64,000 bases of DNA from Ranitomeya imitator. Its lineage: Eukaryota. Both the position numbers and the translations under genes were made by a program. Below are positions 17,953 to 52,975 of the stretch, piece after piece; the first letter of the stretch is position 1; each line of letters starts with the position of its first letter. The notes beneath the pieces are model-generated. The model ran no database searches, was not told the origin of the DNA, and was given only the letters and a program-made list of their open reading frames with translations. Location: contig NC_091291.1 of the NCBI RefSeq assembly GCF_032444005.1, positions 144,150,001-144,214,000 on the forward strand. The letters are read 5' to 3'.

Positions 17953-18613
<661 letters not shown>

Positions 18614-18730: not shown

Positions 18731-19868
18731 CCAGCAGAACAGTGAGTGCAGCTCTGGGGTATAATACAGGATGTAACTCAGGATCAGTAATGTAATGTAT
18801 GTACACATGACTGCACCAGCAGAATAGTGAGTGCAGCTCTGGGGTATAATACAGGATGTAACTCAGGATCAGTAATGTAATGTATGTACACAGTGACTGC
18901 ATGAGCAGAACAGTGAGTGCAGCTCTGGAGTATAATACAGGATGTAACTCAGGATCAGTAATGTAATGTATGTACACAGTGACTGCACCAGCAGAATAGT
19001 GAGTGCAGCTCTGGAGTATAATACAGGATGTAACTCAGGATCAGAAATGTAATGTATGTACACAGTGACTGCACCAGCAGAATAGTGCGTGCAGCTCTGG
19101 AGTATAATACAGGATGTAACTCAGGATCAGTAATGTAATGTATGTACACAGTGACTGCACCAGCAGAATAGTGAGTGCAGCTGTGGGGTATAATACAGGA
19201 TGTAACTCAGGATCAGTAATGTAATGTATGTACACAGTGACTGCACCAGCAGAATAGCGAGTGCAGCTCTGGGGTATAATACAGGATGTAACTCAGGATC
19301 AGTAATGTAATGTATGTACACAGCGACTGCACCAGCAGAATAGTGAGTGCAGCTCTGGGGTATAATACAGGAGGTAACTCAGGATCAGTAATGTAATGTA
19401 TGTACACAGCGACTGCACCAGCAGAATAGTGAGTGCAGCTCTGGGGTATAATACAGGAGGTAACTCAGGATCAGTAATGTAATGTATGTACACAGTGACT
19501 GCACCAGCAGAATAGTGAGTGCAGCTCTGGGGTATAATACAGGAGGTAACTCAGGATCAGTAATGTAATGTATGTACACAGTAACTGCACCAGCAGAATA
19601 GTGAGTGCAGCTCTGGAGTATAATAGAGGAGGTAACTCAGGATCAGTAATGTAATGTATGTACACAGTGACTGCACCAGCAGAATAGTGAGTGCAGCTCT
19701 GGGGTATAATACAGGAGGTAACTCAGGATCAGTAATGTAATGTATGTACACAGTAACTGCACCAGCAGAATAGTGAGTGCAGCTCTGGAGTATAATAGAG
19801 GAGGTAACTCAGGATCAGTAATGTAATGTATGTACACAGTGACTGCACCAGCAGAATAGTGAGTGCAG
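18731..19868 (+). repeat. 86-bp satellite, left arm (split by the L1)
   Basis: Unit cagcagaatagtgagtgcagctctggggtataatacaggatgtaactcaggatcagtaatgtaatgtatgtacacagtgactgcac; 81-bp variants lack one gtaat. Confidence 0.97.
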
Positions 19869-20650
19869 GGGGCGTGGCTATGTAGCCAAAGAGAGAAGAC
19901 GTACCCTGAGAGAGCTCCCAAATCCTGACATTATCCTGCCACTCAGACCCCTTTAAAGAGCGGGCTACCTGTGAGCTGTAGTCCCCCTTGGACCCTGGGG
20001 AGCGTGTGACCACTGCGGGAGGCTGTGTGAGATCCGGAGGAGAGCAGGGAGCCGGCGGAGCCTGCGGTAGTGGTGAGCCCTGTGTGGAGCGGCGGCCATT
20101 TTACAAGCGCGCGCTCTGAGGAGCGCAGCGGCGCCAGCACCCTTTGATCCCGGCGGCTGGACTCTAATACACCGGGAGCTGAGGAGTCTCGATCGGCGGT
20201 ACCGGCGTGGGCGGCAGTTAATACAGAGGCGCACGATCTGGTGAGAGGAGACGCGGCGCCGAGCACTAGATCTGCAGCGCCGCTTGGGAGGTGGACGCTC
20301 ATCCTGTGATACATTAAGGGACAAGCGGTGAGTGCTCTGGAAAATTGGGCCCCGCTTGCCCCCCATTTAAAGACATCTTCCCTACTGGTGCTAATAATTT
20401 GGAGGGTCTGGCTCCCCTCCCCCTCTGCTGCCTTTGCCGCTGCTGCAGGCTCCCCCCCCCCCTTGGGGCACAGAACTCTGCTGTTATCTGGGGGCAGAGG
20501 TGCTTACTGCTGGAAGGACTTTGCATGTCCAGGGCTGCCTCATAGCAACACGTGGGCAGTTTCTGCCGGCTCTACTGTTTATCTGACATTAAAACGACAT
20601 ATTTCAGATCATAACTCTAGTTACTCTGCTGCCTCTCATTCCTGTCAACT

Positions 20651-21559
20651 ATGCAGCACTCTAAAGGATCAGGAACGGCTGATAGGCTTAAAAAATTTGC
20701 CAGAGAGGATCCCCCGGATGGTGGACGGACCCTCAGAAACAACCCCTCACAGACTCAGCGTAAAGGTCGTCCTTCTGATAGTACTGAGGAAGGGGAACAA
20801 GAGGAGTTAACCCTTAAACAGGCCTCTGAGCAATTAATGCAGGCTATCTCCTTAACTAGATCCTCTCTTACTGAAAAGATAGAGGATGTACACACTGAGG
20901 TGGGCCGTCTAAGACTAGATATGCAGACTATGGGAGGTCGCATCGCAGAGGTGGAAACGAGAGTGTCACAAATAGAAGATACCATTCCGCCCATGGAGAC
21001 TAAATTGACAAAGGTGGCTGGCTCCATAAACGCCTGGAAACAAAAAGCGGATGACCTGGAGAATAGACTACGTCGGAATAATATTCGTATTATTGGTCTA
21101 CCAGAGCGCGCGGAGGGCCAGCGACCTGAGGAGTTCCTAGAGGACTGGCTTAAGACTTCTCTGGAAGGAGAATTCTCCTCAACTTTCTCTGTGGAGAGAG
21201 CCCATAGGGTCCCTGCGAGGCCCCTCCCTCCTGGAGCTCCGCCGAGACCTTTTTTGGCGCGTATTCTCAATTGCAAAGATAGGGATGCTATCCTGCGTCT
21301 GGCACGACAGAAGAGCCCTATTAAGTTCCACAATGCCACAATCTCGATATTTCCGGATTTCTCCATGGAGCTTCAGAAACAGCGGGCACGGTTCCAAGAA
21401 ATTAAGAAACAACTCAGAGACCGGAATGTTGTATACTCCATGATTTATCCTGCTCGTCTGCGGATCGCCCATGAGGGTTCCTCTATATTTTTCACTGATC
21501 CAGAGGAGGTGACTGAGTGGTTACGGGTCCACAAGGTGTCCAATGTAAAGACATTCTAA
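20651..21559 (+). CDS. L1 ORF1p (coiled coil, RRM, CTD), 302 aa
   Basis: Motifs RRNNIRIIGLPE, VERAHR, PRPFLAR, IFPDFS, YPARL typical of L1 ORF1p. Confidence 0.95.
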   Translation: MQHSKGSGTADRLKKFAREDPPDGGRTLRNNPSQTQRKGRPSDSTEEGEQEELTLKQASEQLMQAISLTRSSLTEKIEDVHTEVGRLRLDMQTMGGRIAEVETRVSQIEDTIPPMETKLTKVAGSINAWKQKADDLENRLRRNNIRIIGLPERAEGQRPEEFLEDWLKTSLEGEFSSTFSVERAHRVPARPLPPGAPPRPFLARILNCKDRDAILRLARQKSPIKFHNATISIFPDFSMELQKQRARFQEIKKQLRDRNVVYSMIYPARLRIAHEGSSIFFTDPEEVTEWLRVHKVSNVKTF

Positions 21560-21847
21560 AGTACTTGAGTGGATAATTCTATAGTGGAGCTTTCCATATG
21601 GGTGCCTAACCTACCAACAATACCGAACGCTTAATTTAGCCAGGGTATCCCCATTTTCACTTGATAATAGGAGCATGAGACGAAGCTCCTACTCTGTTTG
21701 GTTTTCGGTTTGTTTTTCTTTCTATGTTTGTTCTATTTGTTATGAAGGTAGAAATCGCCGCCAGTGGATATCTCGACCTCTATGTGTTATCCCTAGGCCC
21801 TTCCTGGACAACATTGTTTATTATATTTTTTTTTTTTATGAGTAAGT

Positions 21848-24800
21848 ATGGGGTCTGAAATAATATGCATGACCTGGAATGTGCGGGGTATTAAAGCTCC
21901 CCGGAAAAAGATAAAGGTATTTTCACAGATCAAGCGTCATCACCCACACATTGTAGCGTTGGTTGAGACACATTTGACTAGGGACACGGCCCGGTGTGTA
22001 CAGAAACCGTGGGTGCAGTGGTCCATACACGCGTTCCACACTAGTTATTCAAGAGGGGTTTCGCTGTTAATCCACAGAGACGTTAGATGGGAGGTGAGGG
22101 AGGCTAAGAGGGACTCTGAAGGTCGATTTGTCTTTGTATACGCATTAATTAACTCTCGTGAATATGTCATATTATGTGTTTATAACCCCCCTCCAGCTAA
22201 TCTTTCAATACTCCGGATGGCAATGAGCTTTGCCTTAAGCTATCCGGACGCAAATGTCATATGCATGGGAGATTTCAATCTGGTAATGGACACCCGCTTG
22301 GATAGGTTGAGACTGGGCGATGACATAGCAGGGGAACCCTCCTCTCAGACTCCATCCCCTTTGGCTTTGTTTATGGAGGGTAGTGGTTGGTTGGATTTGT
22401 GGAGAACGCGTCATCCGGGGGTAAGGGGCTATACCTGCCACTCATCTACCAGACGTTCCCTCTCTCGCCTGGATTATATATTCGGATCCGTGGGATTGGC
22501 GACAGTGGTGGATAGTATTGAACATGGCAATAGAGGAATTTCTGACCACAGCCCGGTTATCCTTAAACTTAAATTTGGGCACTCAAATAATGGCATAGTG
22601 TGGAAATTGAATCCATTTTGGCTCAAGTTAATAGATTCCAATGATAGAACTGTGGACCAGTTGAAGGGCTTTATTTTATCCCACCCGGAACCCCAAGACA
22701 CTAATCTATTCTGGGATACCCTTAAGGCATATCTAAGGGGGTGTCTTTCTTCTACGATATCTTACATAAAAAGGGTAACTTCGAGGGAGGATGACGAGAT
22801 GGAACAACGACTAAAAGATTCGGAGACTGCATATATTTCTGATCCAACTAACGGTAATAGACTTGAGTGGTTGACTTCCCAGAGGTTATATGTTCAGCAT
22901 ACAGATGCCAAATCTAAGCGTAAATTATTTTTTACCCGTCAATCCTTTTTTGAATTGGGAAACCAGGCTAGCAAATTTTTGGCTTTTCTGGTACGCCAAC
23001 ATAGTGTCTCCAATACTATACTACAGATTCGAACACCAGACGGATCGTTGGTGTCCTCGACTGAGGAGATACTTCGCTGCTTTCACGATTATTATAAGTC
23101 GCTATATACATCTAAGTGTGACTTTGATATTCAGGAAAACCTGGACTATTTATCAGATGTGACATTTCCTCTACTGACCCCAGCTCAGCGAGCCTTTATG
23201 GACGCAGAGTTTACCTTGGAGGAGGTTGAAAATGCTCTGATGGATATGGCCTCTGGGAAGGCTCCTGGCCCAGACGGGTTTCCCATTGAATTATATAGGA
23301 AATATCATGATATACTAGCACCACTTTTGTTGAGAGTGTTCCAGGGGGCGTGGGAGGGGGGTTCTATGCCCGACACGTTCTATGAAGCAAATATTATTGT
23401 ACTTAAAAAAGAAGGGAAGGACCCGCTGGAGTGTGGATCTTATAGGCCTATCTCGCTAGTAAATGTAGACTATAAAATCTTCACTAAAATCCTAGCTACT
23501 AGACTTAATTCGATTATATTGGACCTTGTACATCCAGACCAGACGGGTTTTATGCCGGGCAAAAATACTTCGATTAACATTAGAAGGGTCCAGTCAGTAG
23601 TTCAATACAGCTCATTGGAACTAGATAACTCCTGGGCTCTGGCATCCTTGGATGCGGCCAAAGCCTTTGACTCTCTTGAATGGCCCTTCCTATTAGCATG
23701 TTTACAAAAATATGGTTTTGGGGATAAATTTTTGAAATGGGTAGGTCTATTGTATATGAAACCCAAGGCCCGTATAATTGTTAACGGTTCCATCTCCAAA
23801 TCTTTTTCATTATATAGAGGGACCCGCCAGGGGTGTCCCCTCTCCCCGGCCCTCTTTGCCCTCGCAATAGAGGCCCTGGCGATACGTGTAAGATCATCTA
23901 CAGACATTAAAGGCATAAATATAGCTGGTCGTGTGGACACCATTGGCCTATATGCTGACGACATGGTGATATTTATGGATGAGGCGGAAGTAACACTACC
24001 ACGGGTAATCGCTACTGTGGACAGATTCAGTAGACACTCAGGCTTATACATAAATTGGGACAAATCGGCGTTGATGTCTCTCTCCCATATTCCGATGCCC
24101 GGTCTTGGGACCCTTTCCTCCCTTCCTATTGTACCTAGCTTTAAATACCTGGGTATACATATATCTCACTGTAATAGATCTGATCTACAACTTAATATAT
24201 TTCCGTTATTAGAATTAGTTAAATCTAAATTTGCAACTTGGAGCAAACTTCCATTGTCTGTAGCTGGCCGTATCAACTTAATCAAAATGATACTGCTCCC
24301 TAAGCTCTGTTACTGTCTTCAACATAGTGCTGTGCTAGTCCCTAAATTCTTCTTCATGGGTCTGAACTCTCAAATCACATCTTTCATATGGGGGAAATCC
24401 AGGCCCAGACTTAGACTGTCTACGCTGCAGAGACCAAGGCAGGGGGGTGGGGCTGCGTTGCCAGACTTCTATTTATATTATTTGGCCGGTCAGGTTAAAG
24501 CACTCAATAAATGGATGCCCAATAATTGCCTCCCTAACTCTGAAAGTCATTTACTTCATGCAGCTCAAACTGACTGTCCATTGAACTTTTTAGAGTTGGA
24601 GAAAATTAATATCCCTCGCATGTTGCCCTTGCTTCGCTTGGCGCGGTCAGTTTGGAGACAAATTAAAAAAACTGTAGGATTCACAGATATTATAGCGGAG
24701 ATGCCACTGTGGAGGAACGGTTATTTCTCAACTTTATTGAATCACCCATCAGCGGACTTTTGGATTGGGCATGGTGTCTCCTCAGTGGGTGATTTGTATG

Positions 24801-25615
24801 ATGGTGGGGTGTTTGTGTCCTTTGAGCAATTGCAAACTAAGTATGACGTACCGAGATCCCAATTCTTCCGATATCTACAGTTACGGTCAGCCATACAATC
24901 ATACATGAGACAGGCAGGTGTAGGTCGGGCTATATCCTCTTTACCCTTGATAGGAATTCTTAAATCGCAGGGCCCCCAGGGCCTTATCTCCTCCTTATAT
25001 ACCTATCTGCTATCTTCGGGAGCCATGTCGACTGTCAATTCCATTAAAGGGAAGTGGGGGGGACTTCTTTCCAATGTACAAGAGGAGGAATGGGATGACA
25101 TTCTTGAATCTCCAATTAAAGTATCCCCATCAGTTAACAATAGGATGACCCAGCTATACATACTACACCAATCATACTTAACCCCGGTAAGGCTCTTTAA
25201 GATGGGTAGGTTTCAAACATCTGAGTGTATGAGATGCCGGGCTCTAGATGCAGACTTCATCCACATGATATGGAGATGCCCTGTTGTTCTTCAATATTGG
25301 AGAGAGGTGATATCACTACTTGCAACATTGCTGTCAATTCCAGTTCCCCTTGACCCACTAGTTTGCATATTTGGGGTGTGGGAGGAGGAGTCCTGGGATC
25401 ATTGCATTGATATTTTCCTACGCGAAACGCTCTTTATGGCACGAAAGGTACTGGCTTTGCGGTGGATGGGGAGCTCGAACCCATCTACAAGAGCTTGGAT
25501 TGATTTGGTTAATTCGATCATTCCATATGAACGCACGTTGTATCAAAATAGAGGATGTCCGGGAAAATTTGAAAAGATCTGGGGTGGGTGGAATTCTTCC
25601 CATCTTACCCTGTAG
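21848..25615 (+). CDS. L1 ORF2p (APE endonuclease, reverse transcriptase, C-terminal CCHC), 1255 aa, uninterrupted
   Basis: EN: TWNVRG, LVETH, GDFN, SRLDY, SDHSP. RT: PGPDG, YRPISL, LDAAKAFD, GTRQGCPLSP, YADD, FKYLG. Knuckle: CMRC...HMIWRC. Confidence 0.98.
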   Translation: MGSEIICMTWNVRGIKAPRKKIKVFSQIKRHHPHIVALVETHLTRDTARCVQKPWVQWSIHAFHTSYSRGVSLLIHRDVRWEVREAKRDSEGRFVFVYALINSREYVILCVYNPPPANLSILRMAMSFALSYPDANVICMGDFNLVMDTRLDRLRLGDDIAGEPSSQTPSPLALFMEGSGWLDLWRTRHPGVRGYTCHSSTRRSLSRLDYIFGSVGLATVVDSIEHGNRGISDHSPVILKLKFGHSNNGIVWKLNPFWLKLIDSNDRTVDQLKGFILSHPEPQDTNLFWDTLKAYLRGCLSSTISYIKRVTSREDDEMEQRLKDSETAYISDPTNGNRLEWLTSQRLYVQHTDAKSKRKLFFTRQSFFELGNQASKFLAFLVRQHSVSNTILQIRTPDGSLVSSTEEILRCFHDYYKSLYTSKCDFDIQENLDYLSDVTFPLLTPAQRAFMDAEFTLEEVENALMDMASGKAPGPDGFPIELYRKYHDILAPLLLRVFQGAWEGGSMPDTFYEANIIVLKKEGKDPLECGSYRPISLVNVDYKIFTKILATRLNSIILDLVHPDQTGFMPGKNTSINIRRVQSVVQYSSLELDNSWALASLDAAKAFDSLEWPFLLACLQKYGFGDKFLKWVGLLYMKPKARIIVNGSISKSFSLYRGTRQGCPLSPALFALAIEALAIRVRSSTDIKGINIAGRVDTIGLYADDMVIFMDEAEVTLPRVIATVDRFSRHSGLYINWDKSALMSLSHIPMPGLGTLSSLPIVPSFKYLGIHISHCNRSDLQLNIFPLLELVKSKFATWSKLPLSVAGRINLIKMILLPKLCYCLQHSAVLVPKFFFMGLNSQITSFIWGKSRPRLRLSTLQRPRQGGGAALPDFYLYYLAGQVKALNKWMPNNCLPNSESHLLHAAQTDCPLNFLELEKINIPRMLPLLRLARSVWRQIKKTVGFTDIIAEMPLWRNGYFSTLLNHPSADFWIGHGVSSVGDLYDGGVFVSFEQLQTKYDVPRSQFFRYLQLRSAIQSYMRQAGVGRAISSLPLIGILKSQGPQGLISSLYTYLLSSGAMSTVNSIKGKWGGLLSNVQEEEWDDILESPIKVSPSVNNRMTQLYILHQSYLTPVRLFKMGRFQTSECMRCRALDADFIHMIWRCPVVLQYWREVISLLATLLSIPVPLDPLVCIFGVWEEESWDHCIDIFLRETLFMARKVLALRWMGSSNPSTRAWIDLVNSIIPYERTLYQNRGCPGKFEKIWGGWNSSHLTL

Positions 25616-25930
25616 ACTCATCGTGGTGTGGGGATTTCACGTGGAGAGGTAGGCGCGAGGCATTGCGGCGAGTTAGTAGTTAAGAGTACAGTTTTATTTT
25701 AGGAGTTCTGGTTTTACGAGTTTTTCTATTTACATAATTCACATGTTACAATCGATTTAATAAATCTAATAATCACAAGACAATGCTGGATATAGGTGAC
25801 AGTTATGTTTTATTGTCTGCTTACCAATGCATGATTTATGTGTATCATACACTATGTTTAATAATCTTGGATACAAAATGTATGTAACATCACTTATTTT
25901 GTTGCTAATAAACGAATTTAAAAAAAAAAA

Positions 25931-27984
25931 GAATAGTGAGTGCAGCTCTGGAGTATAATACAGGATGTAACTCAGGATCAGAAATGTAATGTATGTACAC
26001 AGTGACTGCACCAGCAGAATAGTGCGTGCAGCTCTGGAGTATAATACAGGATGTAACTCAGGATCAGTAATGTATGTACACAGTGACTGCACCAGCAGAA
26101 TAGTGAGTGCAGCTGTGGGGTATAATACAGGATGTAACTCAGGATCAGTAATGTAATGTATGTACACAGTGACTGCACCAGCAGAATAGCGAGTGCAGCT
26201 CTGGGGTATAATACAGGATGTAACTCAGGATCAGTAATGTAATGTATGTACACAGTGACTGCACCAGCAGAATAGTGAGTGCAGCTCTGGGGTATAATAC
26301 AGGAGGTAACTCAGGATCAGTAATGTAATGTGTGTACACAGCGACTGCACCAGCAGAATAGTGAGTGCAGCTCTGGAGTATAATACAGGATGTAACTCAG
26401 GATCAGTAATGTAATGTATGTACACAGTGACTGCACCAGCAGAATAGTGAGTGCAGCTGTGGGGTATAATACAGGATGTAACTCAGGATCAGTAATGTAT
26501 GTACACAGTGACTGCACCAGCAGAATAGTGAGTGCAGCGCTGGAGTATAATACAGGATGTAACTCAGGATCAGTAATGTATGTACACAGTGACTGCACCA
26601 GCAGAATAGTGCGTGCAGCTCTGGAGTATAATACAGGATGTAACTCAGGATCAGTAATGTAATGTATGTACACAGTGACTGCACCAGCAGAATAGTGAGT
26701 GCAGCTGTGGGGTATAATACAGGATGTAACTCAGGATCAGTAATGTAATGTATGTACACAGTGACTGCACCAGCAGAATAGCGAGTGCAGCTCTGGGGTA
26801 TAATACAGGATGTAACTCAGGATCAGTAATGTAATGTATGTACACAGTGACTGCACCAGCAGAATAGTGAGTGCAGCTCTGGGGTATAATACAGGAGGTA
26901 ACTCAGGATCAGTAATGTAATGTATGTACACAGCGACTGCACCAGCAGAATAGTGAGTGCAGCTCTGGGGTATAATACAGGAGGTAACTCAGGATCAGTA
27001 ATGTATGTACACAGTGACTGCACCAGCAGAATAGTGAGTGCAGCTCTGGGGTATAATACAGGAGGTAACTCAGGATCAGTAATGTAATGTATGTACACAG
27101 TGAGTGCACCAGCAGAACAGTGAGTGCAGCTCTGGAGTATAATACAGGATGTAACTCAGGATCAGTAATGTAATGTATGTACACAGTGACTGCACCAGCA
27201 GAATAGCGAGTGCAGCTCTGGGGTATAATACAGGATGTAACTCAGGATCAGTAATGTAATGTATGTACACAGTGACTGCACCAGCAGAATAGTGAGTGCA
27301 GCTCTGGGGTATAATACAGGAGGTAACTCAGGATCAGTAATGTAATGTATGTACACAGCGACTGCACCAGCAGAATAGTGAGTGCAGCTCTGGAGTATAA
27401 TACAGGATGTAACTCAGGATCAGTAATGTAATGTATGTACACAGTGACTGCACCAGCAGAATAGTGAGTGCAGCTGTGGGGTATAATACAGGATGTAACT
27501 CAGGATCAGTAATGTATGTACACAGTGACTGCACCAGCAGAATAGCGAGTGCAGCTCTGGGGTATAATACAGGATGTAACTCAGGATCAGTAATGTAATG
27601 TATGTACACAGTGACTGCACCAGCAGAATAGTGAGTGCAGCTCTGGAGTATAATACAGGATGTAACTCAGGATCAGTAATGTAATGTATGTACACAGTGA
27701 CTGCACCAGCAGAATAGTGAGTGCAGCTCTGGAGTATAATACAGGATGTATCTCAGGATCAGTAATGTATGTACACAGTGACTGCACCAGCAGAATAGTG
27801 AGTGCAGCTCTGGAGTATAATACAGGATGTAACTCAGGATCAGTAATGTATCTACACAGTGACTGCACCAGCAGAATAGTGAGTGCAGCTCTGGAGTATA
27901 ATACAGGATGTAACTCAGGATCAGTAATGTATCTACACAGTGACTGCACCAGCAGAATAGTGAGTGCAGCTCTGGGGTATAATA
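25931..27984 (+). repeat. 86-bp satellite, right arm
   Basis: Same unit and same orientation as 18731-19868. Confidence 0.97.
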
Positions 27985-28179
27985 CCAATCAGCGACGGGC
28001 ACAGTATCGACGTAGATGTCATAATGGTTGCCATGGCGACGATGATGTCATAAAGGTTGCCTCGACCAATCAGCGACGGGCACAGTCTGCCGCGAATTCT
28101 GGAATCATCATTGTCCATATACTACGGGGACATAAATATTCTAGAATACCCGTTGCGTTAGAATAGGGCCACAATCTAG
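27985..28179 (+). mobile_element. Probable Helitron 3'-terminal fragment
   Basis: Ends ...tattctagaatacccgttgcgttagaatagggccacaatCTAG|T: CTAG terminus before T, with a degenerate cccg...ggg hairpin just upstream. No 5' TC end seen. Confidence 0.55.
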
Positions 28180-28298
28180 TTATTTATATACAGCTCTGGC
28201 ACACTCCAGTTCTGTTATTGGGGTGAATAATATGTCTGCTCTATAATACCTCACCACTGAGGGGCCGCACAGACCTCCCTCTGTTATTGGGATATACA

Positions 28299-38610: not shown

Positions 38611-40152
38611 CAGAGCTGCACTCAGTATTCTGCTGGTGCAGTCACTGTGTACATACATTACATTGCTGATCCTGAGTTACATCCTGTATTATACTCCAGA
38701 GCTGCACTCCCTATTCTGCTGGTGCAGTCACTGTGTACATACATTACTGATCCTGAGTTACATCCTGTATTATACTCCAGAGCTGCACTCAGTATTCTGC
38801 TGGTGCAGTCACTGTGTACATACATTACATTACTGATCCTGAGTTACATCCTGTATTATACTCCAGAGCTGCACTCACTATTCTGCTGGTGCAGTCACTG
38901 TGTACATACATTACATTACTGATCCTGAGTTACATCCTGTATTATACCCCAGAGCTGCACTCGGTATTCTGCTGGTGCAGTCACTGTGTACATACATTAC
39001 ATTACTGATCCTGAGTTACCTCCTGTATTATACTCCAGAGCTGCACTCACTATTCTGCTGGTGCAGTCACTGTGTACATACATTACATTACTGATCCTGA
39101 GTTACATCCTGTATTATACTCCAGAGCTGCACTCACTATTCTGCTGGTGCAGTCACTGTGTACATACATTACATTACTGATCTTGAGTTACATCCTGTAT
39201 TATACTCCAGAGCTGCACTCACTATTCTGCTGGTGCAGTCACTGTGTACATACATTACATTACTGATCCTGAGTTACATCCTGTATTATACTCCAGAGCT
39301 GCACTCACTATTCTGCTGGTGCAGTCACTGTGTACATACATTACATTACTGATCCTGAGTTACATCCTGTATTATACTCCAGAGCTGCACTCACTATTCT
39401 GCTGGTGCAGTCACTGTGTACATACATTACTGATCCTGAGTTACATCCTGTATTATACTCCAGAGCTGCACTCACTATTCTGCTGGTGCAGTCACTGTGT
39501 ACATACATTACATTACTGATCCTGAGTTACATCCTGTATTATACCCCAGAGCTGCACTCACTATTCTGCTGGTGCAGTCACTGTGTACATACATTACATT
39601 ACTGATCCCGAGTTACCTCCTGTATTATACCCCAGAGCTGCACTCACTATTCTGCTGGTGCAGTCACTGTGTACATACATTACATTACTGATCCTAAGTT
39701 ACATCCTGTATTATACCCCAGAGCTGCACTCACTATTCTGCTGGTGCAGTCACTGTGTACATACATTACATTACTGATCCTGAGTTACATCCTGTATTAT
39801 ACTCCAGAGCTGCACTCACTATTCTGCTGGTGCAGTCACTGTGTACATACATTACATTACTGATCCTGAGTTACATCCTGTATTATACCCCAGAGCTGCA
39901 CTCACTATTCTGCTGGTGCAGTCACTGTGTACATACATTACTGATCCTAAGTTACATCCTGTATTATACTGCAGAGCTGCACTCACTATTCTGCTGGTGC
40001 AGTCACTGTGTACATACATTACATTACTGATCCTAAGTTACATCCTGTATTATCCTCCAGAGCTGCACTCACTATTCTGCTGGTGCAGTCACTGTGTACA
40101 TTACATTACTGATCCTAAGTTACATCCTGTATTGTACTCCAGAGCTGCACTC
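38611..40152 (-). repeat. 86-bp satellite array in inverted orientation
   Basis: Reverse complement of the 18731-27984 unit. Confidence 0.97.
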
Positions 40153-51386: not shown

Positions 51387-52975
51387 ACAGTGAGCGCAGC
51401 TCTGTGGTATAATACAGGATACGTAATGTATGAACAGTGAGCGCAGCTCTGAGGTATAATACAGGATGTAACTCAGGATCAGTAATGTATGTACACAGTG
51501 ACTGCACCAGCAGAATAGTGAGTGCAGCTCTGGGGTATAATACAGGAGGTAACTAAGGATCAGTAATGTAATGTATGTACACAGTGACTGCACCAGCAGA
51601 ATAGTGAGTGCAGCTCTGGGGTATAATACAGGATGTAACTCCGGATCAGTAATGTAATGTATGTACACAGTGACTGCACCAGCAGAATAGTGAGTGCAGC
51701 TCTGGAGTATAATACAGGATGTAACTCAGGATCAGTAATGTAATATATGTACACAGTGACTGCACCAGCAGAATAGTGAGTGCAGCTCTGGAGTATAATA
51801 CAGGAGGTAACTCAGGATCAGTAATGTAATGTATGTACACAGTGACTGCACCAGCAGAATAGTGAGTGCAGCTCTGGGGTATAATACAGGATGTAACTCA
51901 GGATCAGTAATGTATGTACACAGTGACTGCACCAGCAGAATAGTGAGTGCAGCTCTGGAGTATAATACAGGAGGTAACTCAGGATCAGTAATGTATGTAC
52001 ACAGTGACTGCACCAGCAGAATAGTGAGTGCAGCTCTGGAGTATAATGCAAGATGTAACTCAGGATCAGTAATGTAATGTATGTACACAGTGACTGCACT
52101 AGAATAGTGAGTGCAGCTCTGAAGTATAATACAGGATGTAACTCAGGATCAGTAATGTAATGTATGTACACAGTGACCACCACCAGAATAGTGAGTGCAG
52201 CCCTGGGGTATAATACAGGATATAACTCAGGATCAGTAATGTAATGTATGTACACAGTGACTGCACCAGCAGAATAGTGAGTGCAGCTCTGGGGTATAAT
52301 ACAGGATGTAACTCAGGATCAGTAATGTATGTACACAGTGACTGCACCAGCAGAATATTAAGAGCAGCCCTGGGGTATAATACAGGATATAACTCAGGAT
52401 CAGTAATGTAATGTATGTACACAGTGACTGTACCAGCAGAATAGTGAGTGCAGCTCTGGGGTATAATACAGGAGGTAACTCAGGATCTGTAATGTATGTA
52501 CACAGTGACTGCACCAGCAGAATAGTGAGTGCAGCCCTGGGTTATAATACAGGATATAACTCAGGATCAGTAATGTAATGTATGTACACAGTGACTGCAC
52601 CAGCAGAATAGTGAGTGCAGCTCTGGAGTATAATGCAGGATGTAACTCAGGATCAGTAATGTAATGAATGTACACAGTGACTGCACCAGCAGAATAGTGA
52701 GTGCAGCTCTGGAGTATAATGCAGGATGTAACTCAGGATCAGTAATGTAATGTATGTACACAGTGACTGCACCAGCAAAATAGTGAGTGCAGCTCTGAAG
52801 TATAATACAGGATGTAACTCAGGATCAGTAATGTAATGTATGTACACAGTGACTGCACCAGAATAGTGAGTGCAGCTCTGAAGTATAATACAGGAGGTAA
52901 CTCAGGATCAGTAATGTAATGTATGTACACAGTGACTGCACCAGCAGAATAGTGAGTACAGCTCTGGAGTATAAT
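51387..52975 (+). repeat. 86-bp satellite array filling SRPRA intron 9
   Basis: Same unit as 18731-27984; occupies ~96% of the 1648-nt intron. Confidence 0.97.

What the first reader, a model, noticed from the sequence alone, without database searches (positions are those of the whole stretch)
19853..25945. Intact full-length L1 inserted in a hairpin loop of the 86-bp satellite: candidate satellite-targeting retrotransposon
Seen: both ORFs open, all EN/RT motifs present, A-tail and a perfect 15-16-bp TSD, so the copy is young and possibly active. The target reads CCAGC|AGAATAGTGAGTGCAG, lacking the TT of the canonical TT|AAAA site. The inferred nick lies in the loop of a 6-bp stem (ctgcac...gtgcag) present in every monomer. 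Known: target-specific APE elements (Keno, Dewa, Mutsu, Kibi/Koshi, Xenopus Tx1L/Tx2L) belong to the Tx1 group, whereas this ORF1 looks like canonical L1 ORF1p. Inference: if other copies share this site, it is an L1 family using a dispersed satellite as a safe harbour. One copy cannot show this.
Basis: partly seen in the sequence, partly recalled or inferred. Interest (0 to 1): 0.75.

Follow-up and report, generated by a model that had tools for sequence, protein, structure and literature searches.

The report
Intact frog L1 inside 86-bp satellite
A complete, undamaged L1-type jumping gene really does sit inside an abundant 86-bp frog repeat, but nothing found here shows that its family aims at that repeat, and an ordinary chance landing explains the data.

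Summary
Window 19869-25929 is a 6061-bp L1 with two open ORFs, intact endonuclease, reverse-transcriptase and C-terminal Cys/His motifs, AATAAA, a 10-11 A tail and a perfect 15-16-bp target-site duplication. Removing the element and one duplicate restores the exact 86-bp period. ORF1 is the vertebrate L1 type (coiled coil, RRM, C-terminal domain, no zinc knuckle). ORF2 groups with fish and frog L1s and is much closer to human L1 ORF2p than a separate zf-RVT-bearing group.

The satellite-targeting idea could not be tested.

The indirect evidence favours chance:
- The satellite is very abundant, with four array segments in this window.
- The nick site GC|AGAATA is one of only 3 of 172 monomer positions with four A in the six bases downstream.
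- The 6-bp hairpin is no more stable than shuffled sequence.

This scan earlier reported, on another piece of this genome, a Tx1-type LINE homing to an 86-bp satellite (s1-274989). I could not check whether that is the same repeat or site.

Verdict: an ordinary young L1 insertion (0.75). Satellite homing stays open (about 0.1).

The parts
18731..19868 (+). 86-bp satellite array, part upstream of the insertion (about 13 monomers)
   Evidence: TRF period 86, 97% matches
19843..19868 (+). Monomer hairpin at the target: stem CTGCAC (19843-19848), 14-nt loop (19849-19862), stem GTGCAG (19863-19868). The inferred first nick lies between 19852 and 19853.
   Evidence: Read. The hairpin is perfect in 65 of about 73 monomers. 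The single-strand DNA fold is not better than shuffles, z -0.19.
19853..19868 (+). Left copy of the target-site duplication (AGAATAGTGAGTGCAG)
19869..25929 (+). Full-length L1 element, 6061 bp
19869..20650 (+). 5' UTR (782 bp), begins GGGGCGTGG
   Evidence: Contigs of run X1 cover it at a depth similar to that of the 3' UTR.
20651..21559 (+). ORF1, 302 aa: type II L1 ORF1p (coiled coil, RRM, C-terminal domain), one Cys only, no CCHC knuckle
   Evidence: PDB 2ykp E 2e-13, 2ldy, 2jrb. Weak coiled-coil Pfam hits at residues 42-146. Translation.
21848..25615 (+). ORF2, 1255 aa: APE-type endonuclease (residues 8-234), reverse transcriptase (520-772), C-terminal Cys/His motif
   Evidence: Pfam. Human L1 ORF2p 8sxt E 3e-153 with catalytic residues aligned. 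Tree.
25616..25929 (+). 3' UTR with AATAAA (25907-25912) and a poly(A) of 10 A (25920-25929)
25930..25945 (+). Right copy of the target-site duplication. The first A could belong to the tail, so the duplication is 15 or 16 bp.
25930..27985 (+). 86-bp satellite array, part downstream of the insertion (about 24 monomers)
   Evidence: TRF period 86, 95% matches

Best explanation
This is one young copy of a multi-copy, possibly still active L1-clade retrotransposon of a poison frog. It inserted by ordinary target-primed reverse transcription into an 86-bp satellite array that lies in an intron.

Proposed mechanism:
1. The ORF2 endonuclease nicked the bottom strand after ...TATTCT, which reads GC|AGAATA on the top strand.
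2. The T-rich 3' end primed on the poly(A) tail.
3. The second nick fell 15-16 bp downstream, giving the duplication.

The element landed in the satellite because the satellite is a very large target. It landed at that position because it is one of the few A-rich spots of a monomer that has no TTAAAA. The hairpin is incidental.

Shown: the anatomy, the real duplication, the L1-type proteins, the multi-copy state and the satellite's abundance. Inferred: the order of nicks, the role of A-richness and the absence of targeting.
For: Anatomy: complete L1 anatomy with intact catalytic motifs. A true 16-bp duplication restores the 86-bp period.

Lineage: type II ORF1 goes with vertebrate L1, whereas RRM/CCHC variants go with Tx1 (PMC5203782). 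ORF2 sits in a fully supported 30-row clade of fish and frog L1-like proteins, apart from the zf-RVT-bearing clade. Bit scores against human L1 ORF2p are 515 for this ORF2, 589 and 468 for clade members, and 286 for the zf-RVT group.

Target site: AGAATA is one of 3 of 172 monomer positions (both strands) with at least 4 A in the 6 nt downstream of the nick.

Satellite size: it fills about 6.3 kb of this 64-kb window in four segments. Its summed contig depth is about 3 million, against 50-1600 for the L1, in the same run.

Hairpin: a 6-bp stem with a 14-nt loop, fold z -0.19.

Tail and duplication length are typical of non-specific L1 (my own knowledge).
Against: - The site lacks the TT of TT|AAAA, and five monomer positions match that consensus better, 4 of 6 against 3 of 6.
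- The starts of the three arrays in the window fall within 13 nt of the same monomer position as the L1 nick, which hints that this spot may be prone to breakage or nicking.
- No other copy's flank was seen, so chance is inferred and not shown.
Confidence: 0.75

Rival explanations
1. The family is a sequence-specific L1-clade lineage whose endonuclease recognises the monomer around CCAGC|AGAATAGTG. It would use the dispersed satellite as a safe harbour, as Tx1-clade elements do with their targets.
For: - The insertion is at a non-canonical site inside a conserved, hairpin-bearing part of the monomer.
- Depths of the 5' UTR and 3' UTR contigs in run X1 are similar (about 45-100 against 85-105), so few copies are 5'-truncated. 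Many site-specific LINEs show this, but so do ordinary L1s of fish, lizards and frogs (my own knowledge).
- Satellite-targeting Tx1 families exist (PMC4494074).
Against: - Only one copy was seen, and no second junction could be retrieved.
- The lineage is L1 proper, in which I know of no sequence-specific family. The known ones are Tx1.
- The chosen site is what an unspecific A-preferring insertion would pick.
- The 3' UTR contig branches right after the A run. That fits varied flanks, but it fits varied tail lengths as well.
Confidence: 0.1
2. The family is not sequence-specific but is enriched in the satellite for a regional or structural reason. Candidates are open or transcribed satellite chromatin, single-stranded hairpin loops during replication, or a break-prone spot in the monomer that also marks the array borders.
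For: - Array starts in the window lie at monomer phases 82, 9 and about 6, and array ends at 21-32, where phase 1 is the base after the L1 nick.
- Satellite contigs are very deep in run X3, which is guessed to be RNA.
Against: - There are only three arrays and one L1.
- The hairpin is weak.
- The poly(A) and a regular 15-16-bp duplication point to normal endonuclease-dependent insertion rather than capture at a break.
- The RNA label of X3 is only a guess.
Confidence: 0.1
3. Assembly artefact: an L1 wrongly joined into a satellite array.
For: Both partners are repeats. No listed public contig bridges the junction.
Against: A poly(A) followed by an exact 16-bp duplication whose removal restores the 86-bp period is the signature of a real insertion and not of a misjoin.
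Confidence: 0.03

Closest known systems
Vertebrate L1-clade elements (human L1; the many low-copy L1 lineages of fish, lizards and Xenopus)
   Same: - Two ORFs: type II ORF1p, and ORF2p with an APE endonuclease, reverse transcriptase and a C-terminal Cys/His motif.
- AATAAA and a poly(A) tail, with a 15-16-bp duplication.
- Mostly full-length, low-copy family, as described for non-mammalian L1s.
   Different: - The nick site is GC|AGAATA and not TT|AAAA.
- ORF2 is at most 50% identical to any protein found, so it is a lineage not represented by close relatives in the protein collection.
Tx1-clade target-specific LINEs (Tx1L in the repeats of Tx1D, Keno in U2 genes, Mutsu in 5S genes, Kibi/Koshi in microsatellites, satellite-targeting Tx1 families; PMC4494074)
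   Same: A LINE with an APE-type endonuclease sitting at a defined position of a tandemly repeated, dispersed target.
   Different: - ORF1 is type II without a zinc knuckle.
- ORF2 groups with L1 proper and is far closer to human L1.
- Repeated use of the same site, which defines these families, is not shown.
The 7.6-kb Tx1-type LINE reported by this scan at one exact position of an 86-bp satellite on another piece of this genome (s1-274989)
   Same: Same genome, same stated repeat length, and an intact LINE inside the repeat.
   Different: - The length differs (6.1 against 7.6 kb) and so does the stated clade.
- I could not see that record's sequence, so identity of satellite and site is unknown. 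Look-ups by sequence were blank.

Membership tests
L1 clade (L1 proper) | ORF1p of type II: coiled coil, RRM, C-terminal domain, no CCHC knuckle | tested here: met
   - phmmer to human ORF1p 2ykp E 2e-13 over residues 93-291, and to mouse and human RRM and CTD chains.
- Coiled-coil-type Pfam hits at residues 42-146, below their cut-offs.
- One Cys in 302 aa.
- Pfam Transposase_22 itself did not reach E 0.01.
L1 clade (L1 proper) | ORF2p with N-terminal APE endonuclease, RT and C-terminal Cys/His motif, catalytic residues intact | tested here: met
L1 clade (L1 proper) | RT/ORF2 phylogeny places it with L1 and not with Tx1 | tested here: inconclusive
   - In the FastTree tree ORF2 lies in a 30-row clade (support 100), apart from a zf-RVT-bearing clade.
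- Similarity to human L1 ORF2p is 515 bits, against 286 for that other clade.
- No sequence labelled Tx1 could be obtained, so the other clade's identity is inferred.
L1 clade (L1 proper) | Poly(A) tail and variable-length target-site duplication from staggered nicks | tested here: met
Sequence-specific (target-homing) LINE | Independent copies inserted at the same nucleotide position of the same target sequence | not testable with these tools
   There is one copy in the window. The runs are short contigs that end at the poly(A). The metagenome scans were blank.
Sequence-specific (target-homing) LINE | Copies absent from unrelated flanks, or far rarer there than chance predicts | not testable with these tools
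   Same reasons. The branch right after the A run in run X1 fits either varied flanks or varied tail lengths.
Tx1 clade | ORF1 with RRM/CCHC-type (type I variant) architecture and RT grouping with Tx1 | tested here: not met
   ORF1 is type II with no knuckle. The link between ORF1 type and clade comes from PMC5203782.

The most novel reading that the evidence does not exclude
An L1-clade (type II ORF1) family has evolved sequence-specific homing to one position in the hairpin loop of a dispersed 86-bp frog satellite, independently of the Tx1-type LINE that this scan reported in an 86-bp satellite of the same genome. As far as I know it would be the first target-specific lineage within L1 proper.
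Probability: 0.1. Interest if true: 0.6.

Novelty: new member of a known kind. Interest (0 to 1): 0.25.

Why it matters
As it stands, this is a clean example of an intact, probably recently active frog L1. Its ORF2 is at most 50% identical to anything in the protein collection. That is useful for annotation but not surprising.

It would matter only if the family proved to home to the satellite. In that case target specificity, so far tied to the Tx1 branch among L1-like elements, would have arisen inside L1 proper. The endonuclease, a close structural relative of the well-studied human L1 enzyme, would then offer a natural experiment in how that fold is re-aimed.

A single flank survey on the species' assembly settles the question cheaply.

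Tried and rejected
Searches that gave nothing usable:
2. Reads. All 24 runs are Logan contigs. Laying X1, X3, X15 and X16 on 20031-26030 showed a multi-copy family and a hugely abundant satellite, but no listed contig bridges the 3' junction. The 246-bp 3' UTR contig ends at 25930.
3. Metagenome scans for poly(A) plus target, and for the bare satellite: both blank, so that collection holds no DNA of these frogs and the blank says nothing.
4. A second copy in the window by blastn and tblastn: none.
5. Earlier findings by sequence and by relatives: blank. By words: only the Tx1 note.
6. ESM Atlas: generic EN-RT clusters, with no clade information.
7. Rfam on the window and on the satellite: no match, so the monomer is not a recognisable small-RNA gene.
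8. The careful IQ-TREE run did not finish in time. FastTree was used instead.

Ideas rejected:
- The hairpin as a structural target: a weak 6-bp stem, fold z -0.19.
- The 'duplication' as mere satellite periodicity.
- Endonuclease-independent insertion: poly(A) and a regular duplication are present.

Left out on purpose:
- A protein search with the spurious ORF that spans the 3' junction, because the chance of success was very low for a costly search.
- Any consensus of the family.
Full report
**What is there**

Window 19869-25929 (+ strand) is a 6061-bp non-LTR retrotransposon.
- It has a 782-bp 5' UTR.
- ORF1 is 20651-21559 (302 aa). A 288-bp spacer follows.
- ORF2 is 21848-25615 (1255 aa).
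- The 304-bp 3' UTR carries AATAAA at 25907-25912 and ends in ten A (25920-25929).
- The 16-mer AGAATAGTGAGTGCAG flanks it on both sides (19853-19868 and 25930-25945). Its first A could equally be the last A of the tail, so the duplication is 15 or 16 bp.

The flanks are a tandem repeat, so I checked that this is a real duplication. With the L1 and one 16-mer removed, the satellite anchors are spaced 86, 86, 86. With both 16-mers kept, the spacing is 86, 102, 86. The window has no N.

**The proteins**

ORF2:
- It carries an APE-type endonuclease (Pfam Exo_endo_phos, residues 8-234, E 1e-14) and a reverse transcriptase (RVT_1, residues 520-772, E 5e-40).
- It matches human L1 ORF2p (8sxt) at E 3e-153 over residues 3-893 and again in the C-terminal part.
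- The endonuclease residues aligned to human N14, E43, Y115, D145/N147, T192, D205 and S228-H230 are kept. The polymerase motif reads YADD.
- A C-x2-C-x8-H-x4-C motif lies near the C terminus.

ORF1:
- It matches human L1 ORF1p (2ykp, E 2e-13) over the end of the coiled coil, the RRM and the C-terminal domain, and it matches separate RRM and CTD structures.
- It has a single Cys and no zinc knuckle.

**L1 or Tx1**

Ivancevic et al. 2016 (PMC5203782) tie type II ORF1p to vertebrate L1, and RRM/CCHC variants to the Tx1 branch.

In a FastTree tree of ORF2 with 45 near-full-length relatives, the window's protein lies in a fully supported clade of 30. Its nearest kin are P0001-P0003, at 47-50% identity. 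A clade of nine stands apart, and six of its nine members carry the zf-RVT domain.

Bit scores against human L1 ORF2p:

| Protein | Bits |
|---|---|
| Window ORF2 | 515 |
| P0014 (same large clade) | 589 |
| P0001 (same large clade) | 468 |
| P0049 (zf-RVT clade) | 286 |

I could obtain no protein labelled Tx1, so the placement in L1 proper is well supported but not formally proven. The closest named fragments come from Ranitomeya gene models at 62-76% identity over parts. That agrees with earlier notes of this scan that the genome is a poison frog's.

**The target**

The 86-bp repeat forms three arrays in the window:
- 18731-27985, split into two segments by the L1
- 38611-40152, in reverse orientation
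- 51432-52975

Together they make up about 6.3 kb of the 64 kb. The consensus monomer is 43% G+C.

The hairpin CTGCAC-N14-GTGCAG is perfect in 65 of about 73 monomers. The nick lies four bases into its loop. As single-stranded DNA, two monomers fold no better than shuffles (z -0.19), and a 6-bp stem with a 14-nt loop is weak. I therefore see no reason to give the hairpin a role.

Rfam finds nothing in the monomer.

**Why that position**

I scored all 172 possible nick positions of the monomer on both strands.
- None matches TT|AAAA well. The best match 4 of 6 (five sites), and the observed GC|AGAATA matches 3 of 6.
- The observed site is nevertheless one of only three with four A in the six bases downstream. 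The other two are AATACA and ATAATA.
- An element that primes on its poly(A) tail needs a T-rich primer end. In this monomer, that restricts it to very few places.
- So the position is what an unspecific L1 would be expected to choose once it is inside this repeat.

**Other copies**

This was the decisive test, and I could not do it.
- All 24 public runs are kept as Logan contigs.

Laying four runs on 20031-26030 showed the following.
- The family is multi-copy in the same species. In run X1, contigs specific to this subfamily have depth 47-105, and conserved ORF segments sum to as much as about 1600.
- It is also present in two other organisms (X15, X16).
- The 5' UTR and 3' UTR depths are similar in X1, so few copies are truncated.
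- The window's copy differs from X1's main contigs by about 1.2% (17 differences in 1386 bases of the listed pieces). It differs from X3's contigs by about 0.5% (13 in 2667). X3 is only guessed to be RNA.
- The one listed 3' UTR contig of X1 (246 bp, depth 90.6) ends exactly at the last A. The assembly graph therefore branches there. This fits differing flanks and differing tail lengths equally well.
- No listed contig bridges the junction.
- The satellite's summed depth in the last bin is about 3 million in X1, and it is also huge in the other three runs.

Two metagenome scans were blank even for the bare satellite. The window has no second copy.

**Weighing**

From the depth ratio I roughly estimate 10^5 or more monomers, which is about 0.1-1% of a multi-gigabase genome. 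Contig depths are a poor measure, so this is an order of magnitude only.

A frog genome carries very many LINE copies, so some L1s must lie in this repeat by chance. A scan that reads many windows will meet one.

Against this stand three points:
I could not check it or compare the site.
- Tx1 families with satellite targets are published (PMC4494074).
- I know of no sequence-specific family within L1 proper.

I put ordinary insertion at 0.75, strict homing at about 0.1, and a looser regional or structural enrichment at about 0.1.

**Verdict**

The interpretation remains untested and is less likely than chance. The element is a new member of a known kind. A flank survey on the species' assembly would settle it in minutes.

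I built no consensus of the family and propose no alteration of the element.

Noticed in passing
window 18731, 27985, 38611, 40152, 51432, 52975 (array borders): The three 86-bp arrays have unrelated unique flanks but similar phases. They start at monomer phases 82, 9 and about 6, and end at 32, 21 and 30, where phase 1 is the base after the L1 nick. No duplication was found at their borders. This suggests the arrays spread as units with set ends, or grew in place from a dispersed element of about 110 bp with repeated ends. Only three arrays were seen, so this is weak.
   Followed up: partly
window 18308-18592 (+): An exon-like open stretch of 95 codons ends at a GT donor and has a weak SIR2_2 hit (E 7e-4, below the cut-off). 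The satellite array and the sense-oriented L1 would then lie in the intron just downstream.
   Followed up: partly
whole window: The window is unusually rich in unrelated tandem arrays. At least fifteen families are present, with units including 12, 18, 19, 25, 32, 37, 39, 41, 44, 46, 47, 48, 51, 62 and 198 bp, many 1-4 kb long.
   Followed up: no
window 27986-28200: Directly after the first array, a 20-bp motif (CAATCAGCGACGGGCACAGT) recurs about 110 bp downstream. It may be the end of another repeat or mobile element abutting the array.
   Followed up: no
window 20031-26030, run X3: A run guessed to be RNA holds contigs of 234-509 bp that differ from this copy at only 0-5 positions, and it holds the satellite at very high depth. 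If the run is RNA, both the L1 subfamily and the satellite are transcribed. The label is a guess, and DNA carry-over is not excluded.
   Followed up: no
window 25930-26030, runs X15 and X16: The 86-bp satellite is very abundant in runs of two other organisms as well, so it predates the split of at least three species.
   Followed up: no
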